Origin: Tubulanus polymorphus
Taxonomy: Eukaryota; Animalia; Nemertea
Reading direction: 5' to 3'
DNA length: 64,000 bases
Assembly (NCBI RefSeq): GCF_964204645.1
Contig: NC_134033.1
Location: 9,246,655-9,310,654, forward strand
Position numbers and translations under genes: made by a program. The notes beneath the pieces are model-generated. The model worked only from the letters and a program-made list of their open reading frames with translations, made no database searches and was not told the origin of the DNA. Position 1 is the stretch's first letter. Every line of letters begins with the position of its first letter. Positions 3,671 to 14,200 of this stretch are shown piece by piece.

Positions 3671-4695
3671 GCCAAAGACCGGAGCTGACCGACAAACCAA
3701 CTAATGCTTACCAGGTCTGGCTGTCAATTGTCAAACTGAGATGATGGGAGTCAACACGACCGGTAAAACAGTTAATATCGTCAAATAATGATAAACGGTT
3801 GACCCCAGCATCCCAGCATGACAACGGGCAATTCAGCCAAGCGACCAACCCCGCTAGCCCAACAACTAGCATGACAACAAACCAACACCAGCTGATAGCG
3901 CCGCCACTCGCGTGCTACGGACACTACCAGCATGAATGAAATCAACGGATATTTAGCCGGTTAAAATACGAATTTAAGTAAGTGATCCCACCCAGCCCCC
4001 CTCCCCCCATCTATCCAACATATCAATACACAATATCTTTATACAGTAAACATCTTAAAAATTAAACAACAGTAAATAGATTTACATTTAACATGCCTAG
4101 CCCGCCCCTCTAAATATTATTCAATACAATTCAATACAATACAATATAGTACATTTTAATAATAACAATTGTTCAAACGCTACACTGGTATCTGTAAAGC
4201 AATGCGTGAGATCAATAGAAATAAAGTGAAAATTAAATTGCATTGAATTCACAGTGTAATTACTAGACAAGATGATTGATATCCTGTCCGTCGGTCCCGT
4301 ATTAACATCTTGCTGTAGTAGACATTTTCGGGGCACTTAGGGCCAGACAATCATTATTCATAGAATATCTTACCTTCAATGAGCAGAAGTACCGTGTAAA
4401 CGCACGTGTGAAAAAACCAGGAAATGCGGTAGACTGGTTGCCTGTCCCATTCAATATGGGACAGGTTTTGCCCGTCCGCCATCTTCCGCGGATTTTACGG
4501 ATCCAATCAGATTTCAGTATTCCATCACGTGAACAATGTAACATAGCCGCCTACACTGTGTCTCGATTTACGTTCCATGGACCTCTTTAAAGTCATTTTT
4601 TATACCAATGAAGAAAGAAATTCCGTTAATACTACCAGGTAACGCTTCTGCATGCACTTGTTTAGCGTGTGGTACCGAAAATATCGGTATTCAAT

Positions 4696-5061
4696 AGAGA
4701 ATTTCGTTATCTCTAACGCCATTTCCTCGGGGTTGCCAATGGCCACTAGATGGCGCTTAACAATCACCTTGTAAAGACGATTAAATCTTCATCTACGACT
4801 AAATGATCATTTGAGGTAAGTATCGAGCAACTGATTTATAATCAGTGTGTTATTATCATTCTTAGGGTGCTATAGACTTACCTAATCGCATCCGTAGGCC
4901 TGAGAAATATCCTATTGTTTCGCGAAATGTGCGTATATATTTCGAGTGGCTGCCAACCATTTTAGTTCAAAGTAAAATATGCAGTGGTGCTCCTAGGAGA
5001 GTGACTATGGGAAGCCGTAAAGGCCAAAATATATTCAATTCAATTTAATTTCAGTGTTATT
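4696..5061 (+). repeat. Left TIR of the ISL2EU element
   Basis: Reverse complement of 10935-11299 with scattered mismatches. Confidence 0.95.
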
Positions 5062-5637
5062 AGTGATCTAAGTGCACCGCTGGCCCGAATGTCTATTTCA
5101 TTTAGCTATTTTAGACATTTTCAAATGGATGTTTTTTGTTTAAATATTCATACATGTACTTAATGTATACGACGACCCCGTGATTTTTTCGTTATCCTTT
5201 GTCTTGACACCAGCCAGTCCGCTCACAATCCTCGCCGGTCACTTAATCAGAAAACATCTTAACTCGTATTGGAAATGATACTGACGAATTTAATAATTTA
5301 TCAAAACATTTACATATGATTAATGAAAGTTGATTGACATTATTACAGATTGAAATATAAAACAAATATATTATCTATTGAAATGCTTTATACAGATTGT
5401 AGTTTTTACTAGGCATACCAATTAAAATTATTATTAAAGGTATTTACAGTCGGGAAATATTAGCTACGTACATGTATGTACATAATAAATTAAAAATACA
5501 CTGTACAACTAAATTGAAAAAAAAGGTTCAAATAATCTTGTTGGGCTGTACAAAATTATATTCTAGCTATATATACATATAATTCCTTCATTTGGAATCG
5601 TCGTAGCTAGTGATCGCTTCATCCGTACATGGCTTTT

Positions 5638-7434
5638 TCACTTCCTTTTGAGATATTGTATGATCTTGTCTTTGAAAAATATTGCCGAATTCGTTTCGAT
5701 TCTCTCCCATAAATCATTGTCAAATGAAATTTGTTCAATGAACAGGTCATAACCCGTCCACACAACGAAGAAACACGCCGATATACCCGTCACTTTCATT
5801 TCGCAGTTGATTTGACTGTAGTAGTTACTGCTGCGATTCAGTTGAATTTGACCGCCGTTCATAACCAGAATTGCCGTCTGTTGATTGTTCTTTAAAATGT
5901 TTTTTCCTCTTATCGAATACGGGCATTTAATTTCCACGACAAACTTCCCACAAAATTTGCACTCGAAAATCGCATCTGGGGATGCAGCAATATAGGGCTT
6001 CTGTTTGTCGCAAAACAGACCACATGTCGATACAGAACAATCGACATGGCCCCTATCTTTCATCGTCGAAAGGAATTTCGCTTTTGCTTCTTCCTCTTTT
6101 TCATTGCCCCAAATTACGGCCGGAACAGAAGCTAATGAAGGGCCAGCCGTACAAACTCGGAAGAGAAGATTTTCGCAGTCGACATCTGCTGCCCTTGATC
6201 GTAACATTGTGTTGACCTTGAATGAAAGGATAGTTTTTTCATTATAATCAATGAGCCTATGATTGAGCAATGATGATAATCGTTCAAGTACGTAGCTTGG
6301 TGTATACGTTATGGCACACGGAGCCAGTAATTCTGCCTATTCGATGAATTTTCCATATATTCGATGAAGATTGTCCTCTTGTTGCGCCCTCAAGTACTTC
6401 AATTTGCGCATTAGATATTGAAATAATCGTTTCAATTATTTTACAATCCTCTTCATGATCGATTATTTCCTGAATAGTTGGTGGAAGTGCAGGTGCTATC
6501 TGTGAGTTGTTTCGCAATGACAAAACCGAGATAAGTACTGATCTATTCAGCTGTAGTATGCAGATTTTCATATAGTGACGCTAATCTTGTTTCGTCAATC
6601 ACTCTATGTTGTGCTGTTCTCGGTTCAAAGTTCTTTCTCGAAATAACTGGCGTAGTATCGTTTTCATCAATCTCATCATCGTCGTTTCCATCATAATTCA
6701 AGGCTACCGCATCAGTTCTGAATTTCATATCACTAACTCTCATTGGTTTGATCTGTTTCCTGGCTTGATTGTTCCACGCGCATCCTTCCTCCGTACATGA
6801 TTTATCATTTAGGTAATTTTCACTAGCATGATTAAGTTTATAAAGTACTGCGATTACATGATTGCACGTCTCTCCATAACCTGCTGTGCAACTGCACCAC
6901 GCTGTCTTGATATCACTAGTCTGGCGATCACAAGATATCCAACCGTTATGAGGACTATAATCGTTGATTTTCTGCGAAGGTGTTACTGTTGATTTATATA
7001 CGATGATTGGAATAGATAAATTAATTAATTCATACATGATTGGTCCGACGAATCCGCTTGCAAAGTAGGAATAGGCCTTCATGGTTTTGTACTTTCCGAT
7101 GTAATCCATATTGTAATCTCTGTGTTCAAGGATGAATTTGAATATCTGTCCTATGTTCAGCATGGTCCAATTTCTCATATCGGTGGACCAATTCGAAGTT
7201 GATTTCGGATCGACAGTCCTGCCTTTATTAGCGTAAGTTTGTAATCATCGATTAGTTTTTTCTCGATTTGTACGTCGCTTATTTTAGATGGAGTTTTTTT
7301 TCCCATGCACAAAAGCATCTTGCGAACAATTCAGCTTTCGTGCCCGTCGTCCTTAAACCGCGAGCGCATAAATACGATTTTAATTTGTCTACAGTGAATT
7401 TGACAAAATCATCGTATCCCTGGATCTCAGCCAT
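5638..7434 (-). pseudogene. ISL2EU accessory gene: SAP + SWIM Zn-finger + YqaJ (lambda-exonuclease-like) nuclease, disrupted
   Basis: ATG at 7434 gives MAEIQGYDDFVKFTVDKLKSYLCARGLRTTGTKAELFAR (SAP-like), stop near 7280; AWCSCTAGYGETCNHV (SWIM); TRGQSSSNIWKIHRIGRITGS, IAASPDAI, VEIKCPY, YYSQIN (YqaJ); frameshifts near 6550 and 6280. Confidence 0.88.
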
Positions 7435-7510
7435 TCTGAAATGAAAATAAAATCAATTTTTCAAATTAAGAAGCTTTCATAACTAACATGTGTATTACGT
7501 TTATTTACAG

Positions 7511-10265
7511 ATGGGGAAAAATGACAATATTGCTGTTTTTGTGAAAACGCAAGAAATTATCCGTTCTCAGAGATAAAGAAACCTCATGTAGATGGAAAAT
7601 TGATATATTACGACATTGTCCGACGCAATGATCCAACATTTGAAAAACTGGGTAAGCAGCTAACAGTGACGTCGAAGGTCTGCTCAAATCATTTCATCGA
7701 TGGGAGGCCGACCGATATCAACCCTTATCCATACGTTACAAACGAGGAACAAAATATGCCAAAGAAGCGAAAAAATAGAGATTGTTCACGTTCAGTGATT
7801 AGTAAGAAGACGACAACGCAGCCGATATATACGGATGTTGCGGTAGACGGTTCAGGTGATGGGAACATGATGAGCCTGACATCGTGCGTCGCATTTGATG
7901 AGATGACGCGGGATGTTGACGTAAAGTTCTTTACCGGTTTCGATAATCGGGCAACTTTGAAAACTATTTTCAATTTCTTGTCTGAAAAAGCTGCCTGTAT
8001 GGTTTATTGGAAAGGTGGTCAAACAAGAGAAACTCTGTCGAACAATAAGATGGGTAGAAGGAGAAAACTAATCCTCGAAGATGAATATTTCATGGTTTTG
8101 ATGCGTTTACGTCTGGGGTTATTGGTTCGTGATTTATCACACCGCTTCAACGTATCAATTTCTGCCGTTAGCTCGATATTTTCAACGTGGATACGTCTAA
8201 TGAGGCTTGAATTATCATGTATCATTATCTGGCCTTCAAAGAATCAAACCAAAGCTCTTCTACCAGCTGCATTTGTTTACTTTTATCCGCATATAAGGTG
8301 TATCGTGGACTGCACTGAAATTTCTATTGAAACACCAACAGCGCTCGACCTACAAGCAGCTACTTGGAGCGACTACAAACATTCTTATACGATAAAGTTT
8401 TTGATTGCCATTACTCCAAATGGATTGATATCGTACGTTTCGCCTTGCTACGGAGGTCGTGCTAGTGATAAATATATATTCACTGATTGCGGTATTCTCG
8501 ACTTCATTGAACCACACGACGAAATAATGGCCGACCGAGGTTTCAAAGTTCAGGAAATTTTAATGTCAAGACACGCAACGTTAGCAATCCCCTCGAGTAT
8601 GGGCGGCCATTCCCGCCAAAAATCAGCGTTTCGTCTATTTGTCTGTACTTTGACAAAATGTCATAGTACACCGCCAAAATGTGTAAGCGTAACGTCAAAT
8701 TGTGTAATGCGGCTAAATAACACAGGGGGGCGACACTGTACGGACAGTATTTTGCGGTATTTTTCTCGCTTTGCGATCATCTCAAGGTCGTCTCATTGAA
8801 ATAATTTTGCGAGTATCAAATCGACAAATCGTATCATATTCCCTAAACCCAATAAAATGAATTTATTATTACTTTATTAGTTATCTCGGAACTCATAAAC
8901 TCAAGATGTCGTCTCAGGTATGGAGGCCCTATATGGAAGCCCTGAGACGACACCTTGGGTTCATGAGTTCCCAAGTTCATAACTTCCAGAGTTTATGATA
9001 TTTCTTCACCCAGCACTGGCAGTGGTTGTCTCCACCAGTGATCTCCGTCGCTCTACGATCCTAGTGTAACCAACTGTGGTACAACTGTGGTACATCAGAC
9101 ACTAAGATTCTTGGTGAAGATATTTCGAGTTTATTTGGGCATGTACAACACTATGAAATTATGCGACATAAAGAATCCTATTATAAGGATGTTAAATCCG
9201 ATTACGTCATGAATTAACTAAAAAAATGATGTCCAGCATCAACCAAGACTGGTTGACTGTCCCCAATTCTGCACTGGCAGTCATATGAAGTCGACCGGCA
9301 ACCAGTCTATCATCAGCTTTCTTGATGGTTTATAGAAAATAAATAGATGTTTAAAAATTTCTCATAACGAGCGTTTGTTATCTTTTTCATCATTAAAACC
9401 CGAGCAGATTCATCGAGAGTCACCGGTTATTCGGAGTCACCCTTCTCTCTAGCCCGCGCACAGAAAATCCGAGCTACCTACCAGAGGAGGAACGGAGGCG
9501 CCCTTCAACATACCATTAATCGCTGGTTATTCAGTGTCGTCTGAGCCTGAGACGCGGGTCTTTGATAGAGCATCGTGTTTACATTCGACGTTTCGGTATC
9601 GCAGGCTTTTTTCATTAGACGAACTCATGAACTTGAGAACTCAGGAAGTTATGAACTCGGAACTCATGAACTCAAGATGTCGTCTCAGGGCTTCCATAGG
9701 TTTACGGCAAAGTATTTACTTCCGCTATTTTACCGTACATTATTACTATATATTATAGTATTAACTAACTAAAGTAACAATAAAATCATTTTATTGGGTT
9801 TAGGGAATATGATACGATTTGTCGATTTGATACTCGCAAAATTATTTCAATAAAACGACCTTGAGATGATCGCAATGCGAGAAAAATACCGCAAAATACT
9901 GTCCGTACAGTGTCGCCCTCCTGTGTTATTTAGCCGGATTACACAATTTGACGTTACGCTAACACATTTTGGCGGTGTACTATGACATTTTGTCGAAGTA
10001 CAGAAAAATAGACGAAACGCTGATTTTTGGCGGGAATGGCCGCCCATACCCGAGTGTTTATCATAATGCACAGATGACCAACGATTCAGTGAAAACTACA
10101 TCCCGAATTGCAACCGTCCGGATATATATTGAGCAAGCTATAGGGCGGATGAAGAATTTCAGAATTTTAAAGAATACGCTGGAGGTCAAAACCGTTCCTT
10201 TAATGGATGATGTAGTTATTGTTTGCGCGGCAATATCAAATCTCAAGCGCACACTTCGCTCTTAA
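7511..10265 (+). pseudogene. ISL2EU transposase (THAP + HTH + DDE_Tnp_4-type), frameshifted near the start and interrupted by an insertion at 8598-10048
   Basis: MGKND../YCCFCEN...KVCSNHF (THAP); LMRLRLG..VRDLSHRFNVS (HTH); IVDCTEI, SDYK, YGGRASD, MADRGF; resumes after the insertion as PSVYHNAQM...RIYIEQAIGRMKNFRIL. Confidence 0.92.
8598..10048. mobile_element. IS3EU-like non-autonomous element inserted in the transposase
   Basis: ~285-bp TIRs with TATGG...CCATA ends; 6-bp TSD CTCGAG/CCCGAG (one mismatch); removing the element plus one TSD copy restores the frame LAIP(P/S)SVYH. Confidence 0.8.
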
Positions 10266-10934
10266 ATTAAGGATCATGTTGTTATTAATTAATTTTTGAA
10301 ACAATATCTGTGTGTACTAATTCAATAATTACTATGAATAATGATATGATAAACTGTGTTAATTTAATTCTACCTAAAATAAAGTTATTTAATAATAAAT
10401 AATAACTTTATTTCGAATAGGCTTATTAATTAGGCCTGGCCTATTAACTGTTAGGCCTTACTGTAAATATTTATTAGCTGTGAATTGTATATCGAATTAT
10501 AAATGTTAGCGTTGAAATTGGTTTTCAAAGGATTTGGTTTCCTTAACCTTAATTAAATAATAAAGCATTTTTATTTTCAACACATTTGTTTGGTTTTATG
10601 GCCATAAAGAATCCCCTGTTTGATACATGTACCGGACACGTATGTCTACCCCGGATCCGGCTCGTATTGCCTTGCTCCAACTGTTCAGATTAATCTAAAA
10701 TCAGTCATGATTCAAAAGTTCCTAATTCTCTCTCTTGGAAATGGCTGGTTGAATACCCAGTGGCGGCATCGTAAGATAGAACTGTGGTACCGGTACCCGA
10801 CAGTTAAAACTGACCCCGCTGGGACGTTAGATCAGAGACTTGTGATATCTTTTGTAATCTATTGAGCCATGGCTCTTAGCCTAATGTTTCATTGTTATTT
10901 CAGTAATTTATTTGATTTCACTCGGGTCTTGAAA

Positions 10935-11299
10935 AATAACACTGAAGTTAAATTGAATTGAATATATTTTGGCCTTTACGGCTTCCCATAGCCACTCTCC
11001 TAGGAGCGCCACTGCATATGAACTTTGAACTAAAATGGTTGGCAGCCGCTCAAAATATACGCACATTTCGCGAAACAATAGGATATTTCTCAGGCCTACG
11101 GATGCGATTAGGTAAGTCTATAGCACCCTAAGAATGATAATAACACACTGATTATAAATCAGTTGCTCGATACTTACCTCAAATGATCATTTAGTCGTTG
11201 ATGAAGATTTAATCGTCTTTTACAAGGTGAATGTTAAGCGCCATCTAGTGGTCATTGGCAACCCCGAGAAAAATGGCGTTAGAGATAACAAAATTCTCT
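10935..11299 (-). repeat. Right TIR of the ISL2EU element
   Basis: Reverse complement of 4696-5061. Confidence 0.95.
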
Positions 11300-14200
11300 A
11301 TTCAGAATGGCAGCGTGACAGCGCCGTCGAAACCCACCGGTCGTCAATCAGCAATTTGGACTGGTGGTGGTTGGAAACAACAATTCATAAAATACTACTA
11401 TACAACTACTGACATACTGAACCATGCAGCAGAGGCCATTTGTTTGTTCACTCGAGGCGATTGATTGATTGTTCTTAATGTGACATTGGACATCAGCAGT
11501 TGATCCAGTGAAAATAATGACATAAAAAAGGTAACTTCACCTACTTACTTACTGCGTAAAAATGTGAACATTGAATATGAGTGCTATTTCACAAACACTA
11601 TATTGATTATCTACTGTAGATTATTGTGAGCGTGTTAGTGATGATTTTGTGAGTCACAACTCGTAGGATGTTTTAAGAAATTAAAGTAATGCGTATCAAA
11701 TTAGCTCAACATGAAAAGAATAGATTGCAATGCGTCAAGGTAAGTTTGAAAAATGGATTCTGAACCATTAATTGTAAAGTCAATCCAGGTTTAATTGTAA
11801 GTGTGATATGTATCTTAATTTCAGAATGATAACATCATGCAGTAATCAAAGAGAATAAAGAATCAGCATTAGCTGTCATGAAATGAGATTCCAAATAACA
11901 GGCGGTGAAACTCCTTGATTTTGATAAACTCATCATCATCAGTTACATCAGCAAGCGCCGCTGCACCAAGATGTTGTGTACTTTATTTCTCCACTGCTCA
12001 CGATCTGATAAACTGATGAGGTTTAAAGAGCTGGATTCTGTGAATAACTGCACTAGCGAGCCTTCAATTTGAATTGTGATTGGATTATCTGTCTGGTCGA
12101 GACATGGTTTTGATGATTCTATAGACACTGTAAAATTGTAAACTTTATTCAGTTACTAAATAAAGTCATTTTACAACACTTTTAAAACATCAATTCACTA
12201 AATACATCTCACGAACGGTAGATGTAGAAATGATGTCCCCTGTTCCTTCAGAATGTTCTGTATTCAGTGACGGTCGCGGCAGATCTCACCTCGCATTAGA
12301 TTTCGATCCTTGTTAGTTTATATTCCGAGTACCAGGTACATTATCAGCGGATTTATCTGATACTTAAGCAATTAATGTCTCCGTCCATTGTAAAGGGCAA
12401 TTTTGATATCGCTCGAAGCTAAGCAGATTCGAAGAGACGCCATCTTAACCAGGAAGTAACTTGCTACTTTACATGTTTGACCTTATTTGACGTGCATCGA
12501 AAATGTAAAATGGAGGATGGGCACAACCGGTCTCTAAATGCGGTAGTGCGCGGTGTCTATTGTACGGAGACGCATCGGGGTCATTCACAAATATAATCAA
12601 AGAAGCCGAAACTTTGATCTGTTGAAACAAAATGTCAACATTGCGACTGAAATATTATGAAATAGAATTTAACCTTGATCTCGATTGATTCGAATTTAAA
12701 ATAGAAATCCACCATTCGGCGAATTCTGTCCACACTTGAATTTTAAAAATGTTCCTAATAGGCTACCATATTTCTTGGATCCAAGAAACGATAGTTCATA
12801 GGTCGAGCCACGTTATTCGAGAGTTAGGCGCGAGTCAGACCCCTACGTTTAGACAGGCCTGGAAGTCAATCTAGACGTTTTTCCAGCTAAAATTATGTGA
12901 AAATGTTTGAACAACACCCAACACCCTTTATAGTTCTAGCAGTCCGGGTCTATTTTGATTTCACAGAAGCGCATGTATTCAAAAAGAATGGCAATTTGCT
13001 TCGATTTTGGTATATTTTCGATTATTTCACAAAAACACGAGTCCAGAATTCTATGAAATTTACAGATTGTAAAATAGATACTATATGACACCTCCGATAA
13101 AAAAATCAGATCTCAGGACCATCTAGATAAAAATTGTGCCACCCGTTTTACTGAAAATTTTCGCGATAGGCAAATGCCTCGGAAGCCCAGGGTAGCTACG
13201 TAAAAAATCCTTAAGTCGACGATCAGGAACCAACGACGAGAAAACGTTCTTAAAACTTCAAACCGTAAATTTCACTTTATTTTCTTCGATATATCGGAGA
13301 GACGAGGCTGGACATCCAACCCGCTCAAAAGCTACAACTCGAATCTCTGTTTTCTTTCAACAAATTTTCCACCAGGATACTATTACATAAGACACCAAGG
13401 GTGGCAGAGACCAGAAGGCAGTTATCAAAACAATACAACCTGACTGACACTTCAAGTACATTTCTAAAACAAACAAACAGTCCGACACTCCAAAACTGAT
13501 TGCCATCCTGCCCCCTTAGTAACATCGATGAAAATAAGACAATATTTGTAAAATAAGAAATAGAATTCATAACTAGACCTAAAAATGCTCTGTTAATTTA
13601 GACTAAATTTAGTTAAATATCTACGGTGTTATAGAATAATGAAATGTAGGCTGATAGTAAAACACACGGATATTGGTATTGATATTAGACCTATATGATA
13701 ACAAATGAATAATCAATCATTACGCCCCGGTTAACAATTTCCGAGACACCCTGTACATATATGTATAGAAAGAATCGGATTGCTTTGGTTTCAATAATCT
13801 GCGACAATAACTTCATACAATTTTGGTCTGGTGCGTATGGCATTGAATACACGCAATAAATAACTGTTGTTTTTTTCTGGCGGTGAACTGTTTTTATGAC
13901 AGATTAACTTCCGTTTTGCAATAGATATCAGTTATGCGATATCTGAGTAAATACCATTTTGTATTTGATTGATAACTATATATGGATATAAGAATGATGA
14001 TATTTCATTGTTTTACCCTTGTTTCCGCTGCCATTCCATTCCAATTAGTGCAACATGTAAGTACGCACAAAATATTTTAAAATGTTCATAATTTACAATC
14101 AGAGTGCCAGATCACGTCGTTAATATAATATCATACCTCTGTTAATATTATTTGGATGAACCTACAATATTTTAAATGAAAACATGAAGGTTTCCACAAG

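What the first reader, a model, noticed from the sequence alone, without database searches (positions are those of the whole stretch)
4696..11299. Possible symmetric cross-over expression in an ISL2EU transposon: TIR splice donors and back-to-back acceptors at both start codons
Seen: the divergent ATGs (7434 minus, 7511 plus) are only 76 bp apart and the spacer consists of two 3' splice sites. Plus strand: TAACTAAC branch point (7480-7487) then TTATTTACAG|ATG. Minus strand: TTTTATTTTCATTTCAG|aATG (AG at 7437-7436). Each TIR has a perfect inward-facing donor GAG|GTAAGT (intron start 4816 plus, 11177 minus). Inference: transcripts start in the near-identical TIRs, run antisense through the nearer gene and splice it out as a first intron (4816-7510; 11177-7436) to reach the far gene. 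That would couple transposase and nuclease expression and generate overlapping antisense RNA. TIR promoters are known for maize MuDR, but I do not know this crossed arrangement as described for ISL2EU. Alternative explanation: spliced-leader trans-splicing onto these acceptors.
Basis: partly seen in the sequence, partly recalled or inferred. Interest (0 to 1): 0.85.

Follow-up and report, generated by a model that had tools for sequence, protein, structure and literature searches.

The report
Head-to-head ISL2EU transposon with TIR donors
A decayed two-gene ISL2EU transposon in a ribbon-worm genome has its genes in the opposite order to every relative examined, and carries splice signals that would let each end of the element drive the far gene by splicing over the near one; the signals are real and non-random, but no RNA data could be obtained to show they are used.

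Summary
The element (4696-11299; AT duplication in an A|AT|T target; 365-bp TIRs) is an ISL2EU transposon of Tubulanus polymorphus. It encodes a THAP-like/HTH/DDE transposase (+) and a SAP-SWIM-YqaJ nuclease (-).

New here:
- All other ISL2EU lineages I could resolve (7 in this genome, 3 foreign) have convergent genes that each start beside a TIR. Only this family is head-to-head.
- The acceptors abutting both ATGs are derived. Convergent relatives with the same MGKKD N-terminus lack them.
- Only 0.45% of ATGs in the window have an acceptor this good within 0-1 nt.
- The TIR donor GAG|GTAAGT scores in the top 0.1% of GT sites. It is the only strong donor upstream of either acceptor inside the element, and GT is kept in 15 of 15 TIR copies.
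- A 78-nt intron in the nuclease gene shows these transcripts are spliced.

The cross-over model is therefore coherent and has an evolutionary rationale (terminal promoters stranded by a gene-order swap). It remains unproven. The only runs holding the element behave as DNA, and other RNA routes were blocked.

Evidence against: a second, outward-facing GGTAAGT in each TIR, competing acceptors inside the proposed intron, and no promoter evidence. My probability for cross-over splicing is about 0.4.

The parts
4694..4695 (.). Left AT target-site duplication (right copy at 11300-11301); flanks read a-AT|...|AT-t
   Evidence: The same aAT|AGAG...CTCT|ATt junctions occur in four full-length copies with different flanks.
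4696..5061 (+). Left terminal inverted repeat (about 365 bp)
   Evidence: arms pair with 10935-11299 at 94-99%; 15 TIR copies aligned.
10935..11299 (-). Right terminal inverted repeat
4696..4815 (+). Candidate non-coding leader exon in the left TIR (mirror: 11299-11178 on the minus strand). Three short uORFs, all closed before the junction.
   Evidence: Inferred only; no transcription start site was mapped.
4813..4821 (+). Inward splice-donor motif GAG|GTAAGT (G of GT at 4816)
   Evidence: score 11.7, top 0.1% of GT sites; the only plus-strand donor scoring >=6.5 between 4696 and 7510. GT kept in 15/15 TIR copies.
11172..11180 (-). Inward splice-donor motif GAG|GTAAGT in the right TIR (G of GT at 11177)
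   Evidence: 11.7, against <=6.9 for every other minus-strand donor between 11299 and 7440.
4876..4883 (-). Second, outward-facing AGGTAAGT in the left TIR (mirror at 11110-11117 on the plus strand). Unexplained.
   Evidence: Lost or weakened in 3 of 15 TIR copies.
4745..4757 (+). CCACTAGATGGCG box in the TIR (mirror at about 11238-11250). The AGATGGCG core is shared with the terminus of convergent family B in the same inward orientation.
   Evidence: The reading as a promoter or binding site is inference from memory of YY1-type motifs.
5638..7434 (-). SAP-SWIM-YqaJ nuclease gene. Start at 7434, stop at 5640-5638. Several frameshifts in this copy.
   Evidence: Collinear with intron-less foreign YqaJ proteins.
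6217..6295 (-). Phase-0 spliceosomal intron of the nuclease gene. 79 nt here, with the donor mutated to CT; 78 nt with GTGCGT (L028) or GTACGT (L027) in the other full-length copies.
   Evidence: Foreign proteins align seamlessly across it (FTK|VNT).
7435..7510 (.). 76-bp spacer holding two back-to-back 3' splice-site motifs. Minus AG at 7437-7436; plus AG at 7509-7510; TAACTAAC at 7480-7487.
   Evidence: Both are conserved in all 6 copies that carry the spacer.
7511..10265 (+). THAP-like (C2CH)/HTH_Tnp_4/DDE_Tnp_4 transposase gene. It has a 2-bp frameshifting insertion at about 7527-7530 and is split by the nested element. Stop at 10263-10265.
   Evidence: An intact 439-aa version is at L035:1342-2658.
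8592..10054 (.). Nested, unrelated MITE-like insertion with 285-bp TIRs. Not part of the family consensus.
   Evidence: Absent from L027, L029 and L030; empty site shown.
10378..10399 (+). AATAAA signals about 115-130 nt after the transposase stop. On the minus strand, an ATTAAA starts at 5294, after the nuclease stop.

Best explanation
This is a degenerate copy of an ISL2EU (PHIS superfamily) DNA transposon family of the nemertean Tubulanus polymorphus. Its two genes have swapped positions relative to the usual ISL2EU layout. The usual layout is TIR, gene start, then tail-to-tail gene ends, then gene start, TIR.

In the usual layout a compact promoter in each terminal region drives the adjacent gene. 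In this family each terminal region faces the 3' end of the wrong-strand gene.

The most likely way the family was expressed runs as follows:
1. Transcription starts in the outer ~120 bp of each TIR (inferred).
2. It reads inward, antisense, through the nearer gene.
3. That gene is removed as a first intron, from the TIR donor GAG|GTAAGT to the acceptor that abuts the far gene's ATG. In window coordinates these introns are 4816-7510 for the transposase and 11177-7436 for the nuclease.

Each gene would then sit inside the other's 5'-UTR intron, and the two pre-mRNAs would be complementary over almost the whole element.

Shown here:
- the gene order and its uniqueness among relatives;
- the presence, strength, rarity and within-family conservation of the motifs;
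- that the acceptors are derived;
- that the family's transcripts need splicing, because the nuclease gene has a coding intron.

Inferred only: the TIR promoter, the transcription start site and the actual junctions.
For: 1. Gene order. Family A is head-to-head in four independent full-length copies with their own AT duplications.

2. Relatives. Seven other ISL2EU lineages in the same genome are convergent: L039, L040, L042, L047/49, L048, L050 and family B. So are foreign elements L064, L068 and L069.

3. Terminal promoters. In convergent family B the transposase ATG lies about 145 bp from the terminus with no acceptor before it, so ISL2EU terminal regions must contain compact inward promoters.

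4. Derived acceptors. L039 and L042 share the N-terminus MGKKD.., and L039 also shows its nuclease start. None has an AG next to the ATG. Family A has strong acceptors 0 and 1 nt from both ATGs, a configuration seen at 0.45% of ATGs in the window.

5. Conservation. Both acceptors and TAACTAAC are intact in the ~86% C7 copy, where about 11% of the other spacer positions changed.

6. Donor. The TIR donor is in the top 0.1% of GT sites and is the sole strong donor upstream of each acceptor. About 3.6 donors scoring >=6.5 are expected in 2.7 kb, and 1 is seen. GT is kept in 15/15 TIR copies, and the 80% copy has GGTATGT.

7. Upstream ATG. The unspliced plus leader carries an out-of-frame uATG at 7488 (AACATGT) that overlaps the main ATG. 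Splicing removes it and creates GAG|ATGG.

8. Splicing happens. A genuine 78-nt intron in the nuclease gene shows the host spliceosome processes these transcripts.

9. Poly(A) signals follow each stop well before the far TIR.

10. Precedent. TIR-borne promoters exist in MuDR (PMC3440606).
Against: - No RNA evidence of any kind. X1-X3 cover coding and non-coding parts evenly, have chimeric ends and show no splice joints. X4 holds none of the element.
- Each TIR has a second AGGTAAGT in the opposite, outward orientation. The model has no role for it, which suggests the motif could be something other than a donor.
- Four plus-strand acceptor-like sites as good as or better than 7510 lie inside the proposed intron (5213, 5652, 5806, 6018). 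AATAAA signals also lie on the antisense paths.
- Conservation has little power, because copies differ by only 4-20% and decay neutrally after insertion.
- No promoter was demonstrated in the TIR. The AGATGGCG box is shared only with family B and L050.
- The only intact transposase ORF (C8) sits in a copy that lacks the left TIR.
- NCBI models start at internal Mets and give no 5'-exon information.
Confidence: 0.4

Rival explanations
1. A compact bidirectional promoter lies in or around the 76-bp spacer and drives both genes directly. The acceptor-like and donor-like motifs are not used for 5'-UTR splicing. The T-rich tracts would be promoter or leader composition, and the paired AGGTAAGT motifs in the TIR would be transposase- or host-factor-binding sites, or chance.
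For: - Head-to-head genes commonly share a bidirectional promoter (general knowledge).
- AGGTAAGT occurs twice per TIR in inverted orientation within a shared 15-nt context. That fits a binding site better than a donor.
- The C8 copy with the only intact transposase has no left TIR, yet NCBI annotates it as a gene.
- No splice joints were seen in any run, though those runs look like DNA.
Against: - Two top-1-3% acceptors exactly abutting both ATGs are expected at about 0.45% per ATG.
- They are absent from the homologous start codons of convergent relatives.
- A conserved out-of-frame uATG at 7488 leaves only about 20 nt for a productive unspliced transposase leader.
- 76 bp is very little room for two core promoters and two leaders.
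- There is no cluster of further AGGTAAGT copies, as subterminal binding sites usually show.
Confidence: 0.3
2. The acceptors are functional but are fed from outside the element. The source would be either read-through transcripts from host exons (gene-trap-like expression, in either orientation) or a trans-spliced leader RNA. In the read-through version the outward-facing TIR donor could splice the transcript back into the host gene.
For: - The acceptors look selected.
- On each strand the order is acceptor, ORF, then an outward donor in the far TIR (7510 ... 11113 on plus; 7436 ... 4881 on minus). That is the layout of a cassette exon and would give the outward donor a role.
- The truncated C8 copy could be expressed only this way.
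Against: - SL trans-splicing is not reported for Nemertea in the library searched, and Nemertea is not in the phylum table of PMC2481426.
- The Rfam SL1 model finds nothing, although that search had no working control.
- Dependence on host donors is an unreliable strategy for a family that amplified at many loci.
- A host ORF spliced upstream would put the transposon ATG in an internal position.
- The outward donor is the less conserved of the two.
- A top-0.1% inward donor in the TIR would be left unexplained.
Confidence: 0.17
3. The family was already non-functional, or depended on another family in trans, when it spread. The splice-like motifs are then relics or accidents of the rearrangement that created the head-to-head order, with no expression role.
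For: - All full-length copies carry lesions, and copies are 4-5% diverged.
- Other, younger ISL2EU families with intact genes exist in the genome and could in principle supply proteins.
Against: - An intact 439-aa transposase (L035) and a nuclease that is intact once its intron is removed (L028) survive, so the master was coding.
- Cross-mobilisation by a 37-55%-identical transposase with unrelated termini is unlikely.
- Both ATG-abutting acceptors are kept between subfamilies.
Confidence: 0.08

Closest known systems
Canonical ISL2EU transposons (PHIS / Harbinger-like superfamily; PMC4482050, PMC4122938, PMC9179366)
   Same: - Two genes: a THAP-type zinc finger + HTH + DDE_Tnp_4 transposase, and a YqaJ-domain protein.
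- 2-bp AT duplication in an A|AT|T target.
- Animal host, and about 5 kb without the nested insertion.
   Different: - Gene order is head-to-head, not the convergent order seen in all 10 other lineages examined here.
- TIRs are about 365 bp, against a reported range of 6-259 bp.
- Termini start AG, not GG.
- ATG-abutting acceptors and a consensus donor in the TIR.
- The papers read in the library describe nothing about ISL2EU transcript structure, promoters or introns.
Maize MuDR (Mutator)
   Same: A two-gene DNA transposon with long, near-identical TIRs (~215 bp) that contain the promoters and transcription start sites for both genes. Its transcripts are spliced, and antisense RNA arises from read-through (PMC3440606).
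   Different: MuDR genes are convergent, so each TIR promoter drives the adjacent gene directly. Here each TIR would have to reach the distal gene by splicing out the proximal, antisense one. The transposase superfamily and host kingdom are unrelated. TIR promoter activity is proven for MuDR and only inferred here.
Convergent ISL2EU family B of the same genome (L051-L063)
   Same: - Same host and same domain set.
- AT duplication.
- AGATGGCG box in the same inward orientation near the terminus.
- Host-type introns in its coding sequence.
   Different: - Transposase ATG lies 145 bp from the terminus, with an unspliced leader and no acceptor at the ATG.
- Short GG-type terminus.
- Copies are essentially identical (a young family), whereas the window family is 4-20% diverged and mostly broken.

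Membership tests
ISL2EU (PHIS superfamily) | DDE transposase of the DDE_Tnp_4 type with an HTH domain | tested here: met
   PF13359 at 1.7e-44 and PF13613 at 5e-14 on the intact copy L035. The same domains are found on the window pieces.
ISL2EU (PHIS superfamily) | N-terminal THAP zinc finger on the transposase | tested here: inconclusive
   The C2CH spacing C-x2-C-x50-C-x2-H is present at residues 7-68, and homologues at 40-47% identity carry PF05485. Pfam THAP itself does not reach E<=0.01 on this protein.
ISL2EU (PHIS superfamily) | Second ORF encoding a YqaJ exonuclease-domain protein | tested here: met
   PF09588 at 1.4e-10 on exon 2, with SAP and SWIM on exon 1. Collinear at 31-34% identity with the YqaJ partners of foreign ISL2EU elements. 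The two exons were searched separately and were not joined.
ISL2EU (PHIS superfamily) | 2-bp AT target-site duplication within an A|AT|T target | tested here: met
   aAT|element|ATt in the window copy and in L027, L028 and L031.
ISL2EU (PHIS superfamily) | TIRs of 6-259 bp, usually starting with GG (PMC4482050) | tested here: not met
   The TIRs are about 365 bp and start AGAG. The source says 'usually', so this is a family-level deviation and not an exclusion.
ISL2EU (PHIS superfamily) | Transposase groups with ISL2EU transposases and not with PIF/Harbinger or Spy | tested here: inconclusive
   The best foreign homologues (40-51%) are THAP+HTH+DDE proteins whose neighbours are YqaJ genes. No tree including reference PIF/Harbinger and Spy sequences was built.
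TIR-promoter two-gene transposon (MuDR-like expression logic) | Promoter and transcription start site inside each TIR, reading inward | not testable with these tools
   No RNA run holds the element. There is only indirect support, from convergent relatives whose ATG is about 145 bp from the terminus.
   Read laying showed no such joints, but the runs behave as DNA.
   Both acceptors are kept in 6/6 copies that carry the spacer, including the 86% C7 copy. The donor GT is kept in 15/15 TIR copies. Power is low because divergence is small.

The most novel reading that the evidence does not exclude
A DNA transposon whose two genes are reciprocally nested. Each gene's only coding exons lie inside the other's 5'-UTR intron. 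Both genes use the same TIR-borne promoter, leader exon and donor. This would have evolved after a gene-order swap stranded the ancestral terminal promoters. Expression of transposase and nuclease would be coupled by the identical TIRs, and every round of transcription would produce fully complementary pre-mRNAs. That would be a built-in source of double-stranded RNA for self-limitation through the host's small-RNA pathways.
Probability: 0.35. Interest if true: 0.8.

Novelty: new variant of a known kind. Interest (0 to 1): 0.6.

Why it matters
Nothing is published on how ISL2EU elements are transcribed. The papers in the library give only domain content, target-site duplications and bulk expression.

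This family is a natural experiment. It has the same proteins and the same target site as its relatives, but inverted gene order. The inversion comes with exactly the new signals needed to reconnect terminal promoters to their genes: acceptors at both ATGs and a consensus donor in the TIR.

If confirmed, this would be a new expression architecture for a cut-and-paste transposon, with reciprocally nested genes sharing a TIR leader. It would show how splice sites can rescue a rearranged mobile element. It would also be a candidate mechanism for obligatory antisense RNA and self-silencing.

If refuted, the result still documents the first head-to-head ISL2EU lineage seen in this sample, and a very compact candidate bidirectional promoter.

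Tried and rejected
RNA evidence
- Laid on the full-length copy L027:301-5486, X1-X3 cover genes, spacer and TIRs evenly. They have chimeric loose ends and no splice-like joints, so they behave as DNA or Hi-C. X4 laid nothing. This gives no test of transcription.

Blocked routes
- The look-up of encoding contigs is blocked for the window's own genome.
Wide flanks of the distant families, and host tubulin and actin loci for an SL-signature test, could therefore not be fetched.

Negative results
- The Rfam SL1 model found nothing in the genome, but its control also failed, so the result is uninformative.
- Rfam over 4600-7700 gave no match.
- Hairpin between the two GGTAAGT motifs: z = -0.3, rejected.
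- Cluster of further AGGTAAGT-like sites, as expected for subterminal binding sites: none.
- More diverged copies of the spacer: none exist among the fetched loci. The older copies are deletion derivatives or solo TIRs.

Uninformative
- The five NCBI protein models start at internal Mets or bridge insertions, and say nothing about 5' exons.
- The literature holds nothing on ISL2EU promoters, introns or gene orientation.

Caveats
They are not a host-trained model, so percentiles against the window background are the meaningful numbers.
- The two-exon nuclease protein was not joined.
Full report
**What is there**

Window 4696-11299 is one copy of a two-gene cut-and-paste transposon.
- It is bounded by inverted repeats of about 365 bp (4696-5061 and 10935-11299, 94-99% complementary).
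- It is flanked by a 2-bp AT duplication inside a-AT...AT-t.
- The plus-strand gene (7511-10265) encodes a C2CH zinc finger, HTH_Tnp_4 and DDE_Tnp_4.
- The minus-strand gene (7434-5638) encodes SAP, SWIM and YqaJ domains.

These are the defining features of ISL2EU elements as given in PMC4482050 and PMC4122938. A 100%-identical annotated protein names the host as the nemertean Tubulanus polymorphus.

This copy is dead.
- A 2-bp insertion just after the transposase ATG breaks the frame.
- An unrelated 1.46-kb element with 285-bp TIRs is nested at 8592-10054.
- The nuclease gene has several frameshifts.

At least six copies in the genome carry the central spacer, and about 15 TIR copies were found. 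L027 (C4) is a 5186-bp full-length copy without the nested insertion. L028 (C1) and L031 (C7, about 85% identical) are also full length. All four sit in different flanks with their own AT duplications.

**The observation**

ATG 7511 is the real transposase start, because in the other five copies it reads MGKYDNCCFCEN... straight into the zinc finger.

I scored the sites with a heuristic splice-site matrix against the window's own background.
- The TIR donor GAG|GTAAGT is in the top 0.1% of all GT sites, about 0.02 expected per TIR and orientation.
- The two acceptors are in the top 2.6% and 1.0% of AG sites.
- Only 11 of 2444 ATGs in the window have an acceptor that good within 0-1 nt upstream, and both start codons here do.

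The two TIR donors count as one observation, because the TIRs are copies of each other.

**The main new result: gene order**

Protein-level searches of the same genome found many other ISL2EU lineages at 34-55% transposase identity. In every one where both genes are visible, the genes are convergent, so each starts beside an end of the element. These are L039, L040, L042, L047/L049, L048, L050 and the multi-copy family B, L051-L063. The same holds for three foreign elements recovered through homologous proteins: L064, L068 and L069. The window's family is the only head-to-head one.

In family B the element terminus can be placed exactly, because 12 of 13 copies are identical up to a shared boundary. 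Its transposase ATG is about 145 bp inside the terminus and has no acceptor in front of it. ISL2EU terminal regions must therefore contain compact inward promoters, as MuDR TIRs do (PMC3440606).

In the window's family those terminal regions face the 3' ends of the wrong-strand genes.

**The acceptors are derived**

L039 and L042 share the transposase N-terminus (MGKKDNCC, MGKKDKCS) but have ...CCGATA|ATG and ...GAAAATA|ATG. The L039 nuclease starts ...GTTGAAA|ATG. So an AG abutting the ATG, on both genes, occurs only together with the head-to-head order.

Within the family both acceptors and the TAACTAAC motif are intact in all six spacers. That includes the C7 copy, where about 11% of the other spacer positions differ.

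An out-of-frame uATG at 7488, in a good context and overlapping the main ATG, is conserved. It would burden any unspliced leader that starts upstream of it. Splicing at 7510 removes it and yields GAG|ATGG.

**Which donor**

On the plus strand between the left end and 7510, the TIR donor is the only donor scoring 6.5 or more. About 3.6 would be expected from the rate outside the element. On the minus strand between the right end and 7436, the TIR donor scores 11.7 and the next best scores 6.9. GT is kept in 15 of 15 TIR copies, and the 80%-identical copy has GGTATGT.

The family's transcripts do depend on splicing. A 78-nt stop-containing segment of the nuclease gene (GTGCGT...TTCAAG in L028; window 6295-6217, with a mutated donor) is bridged seamlessly by intron-less foreign YqaJ proteins (FTK|VNT). 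The two exons were analysed separately and were not joined.

**What argues against the model, or remains open**

1. No RNA. The runs that hold the element cover coding and non-coding parts alike, carry chimeric ends and show no splice joints. The possible RNA run holds none of the element.
2. Each TIR holds a second AGGTAAGT in the opposite, outward orientation, within a shared 15-nt context. GGTAAGT occurs only five times elsewhere in the window. The cross-over model gives it no role. It forms no significant hairpin with the inward copy, and there are no further copies. It is also less conserved. It fits a binding-site reading, or a cassette-exon (read-through) reading.
3. Four acceptor-like sites at least as strong as 7510 lie inside the proposed plus-strand intron, and AATAAA signals lie on both antisense paths. 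No donor follows those acceptors, so they could not define internal exons.
4. Conservation has little power at 4-20% divergence.
5. The only intact transposase ORF lies in a 5'-truncated copy without a left TIR, inside a 99%-identical segmental duplication on C8.
6. NCBI's five protein models for family copies start at internal methionines or bridge insertions, and carry no information on 5' exons.

**Rivals**

- A bidirectional promoter in the 76-bp spacer (0.30) is the ordinary expectation for head-to-head genes. It leaves the doubly abutting, derived acceptors and the uATG unexplained.
- External donors, meaning host read-through or a spliced leader (0.17), would use the acceptors and could give the outward donor a role. 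SL trans-splicing is not reported for nemerteans, and host dependence is unreliable for a family that spread to many loci.
- A family with no expression of its own (0.08) is contradicted by the surviving intact transposase ORF, the nuclease that is intact after intron removal, and acceptor conservation between subfamilies.

**Verdict**

It passes the sequence-level tests available here, but it lacks the one decisive piece of evidence, which is RNA.

I put it at about 0.4. It is the best single explanation but not the majority of the probability.

The element is a member of ISL2EU with a variant architecture: head-to-head order, 365-bp TIRs and AG termini. The proposed expression mode is not described for ISL2EU or, to my knowledge, for any cut-and-paste transposon.

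Earlier notes of this scan (s1-510544, s1-511968) record other intact ISL2EU elements in this genome. Neither concerns this family or this expression idea.

Noticed in passing
L051-L063 (e.g. L062:421-3400): A second ISL2EU family (37% transposase identity). Twelve of the 13 sampled copies are identical over more than 2.5 kb. It has an AT duplication, a GGGGCTCGCC terminus, an intact 400-aa frame, convergent genes and an intron of about 330 nt inside the THAP domain. It is probably active at present.
   Followed up: partly
window 8592-10054: A nested 1.46-kb non-coding element with 285-bp TIRs and internal inverted repeats, inserted in the transposase gene. It is absent from the other copies. 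The NCBI model for this copy (P0121, 313 aa) splices from about 8579 into it and ends there.
   Followed up: partly
L029 and L030 (C8:3603500-3610100 and C8:3213100-3219700): A 99%-identical segmental duplication of at least 6.6 kb, about 390 kb apart. It carries a 5'-truncated family copy (window 7226 to the right end). That copy has the only intact 439-aa transposase ORF, which NCBI annotates as LOC141910027.
   Followed up: partly
window 4748-4755 and 11239-11246; L062:450-457: The octamer AGATGGCG lies 30-60 bp inside the terminus, reading inward, in both the window family and the unrelated-looking terminus of family B. It resembles a YY1-type box (from memory). It could be a shared promoter element or a transposase-binding element.
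   Followed up: partly
window 4876-4883 (-) and 11110-11117 (+): A second consensus-donor-like AGGTAAGT in each TIR, facing outward, 58 nt from the inward one. No current model explains it.
   Followed up: yes
L032 / L016 (C1:15615959-15625958): An older deletion derivative of the family (76-89% identity) in which window 6765 is joined to 7783. This removes both gene starts and the spacer, so it is a non-autonomous relative.
   Followed up: no
L064:290-565 and L064:3909-4000: In a foreign convergent ISL2EU element, donor-like AAG|GTAAGA lies about 270 nt upstream of the transposase ATG, and acceptor-like TTTGTAG lies 9 nt (transposase) and 20 nt (nuclease) upstream of the ATGs. 5'-UTR introns may be common in ISL2EU elements.
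   Followed up: no
L033 (C4:16789100-16793100): Directly beside the full-length C4 copy lies a further partial copy (a TIR plus about 950 bp), so three TIRs fall within about 8 kb. This is a local cluster of family insertions.
   Followed up: no
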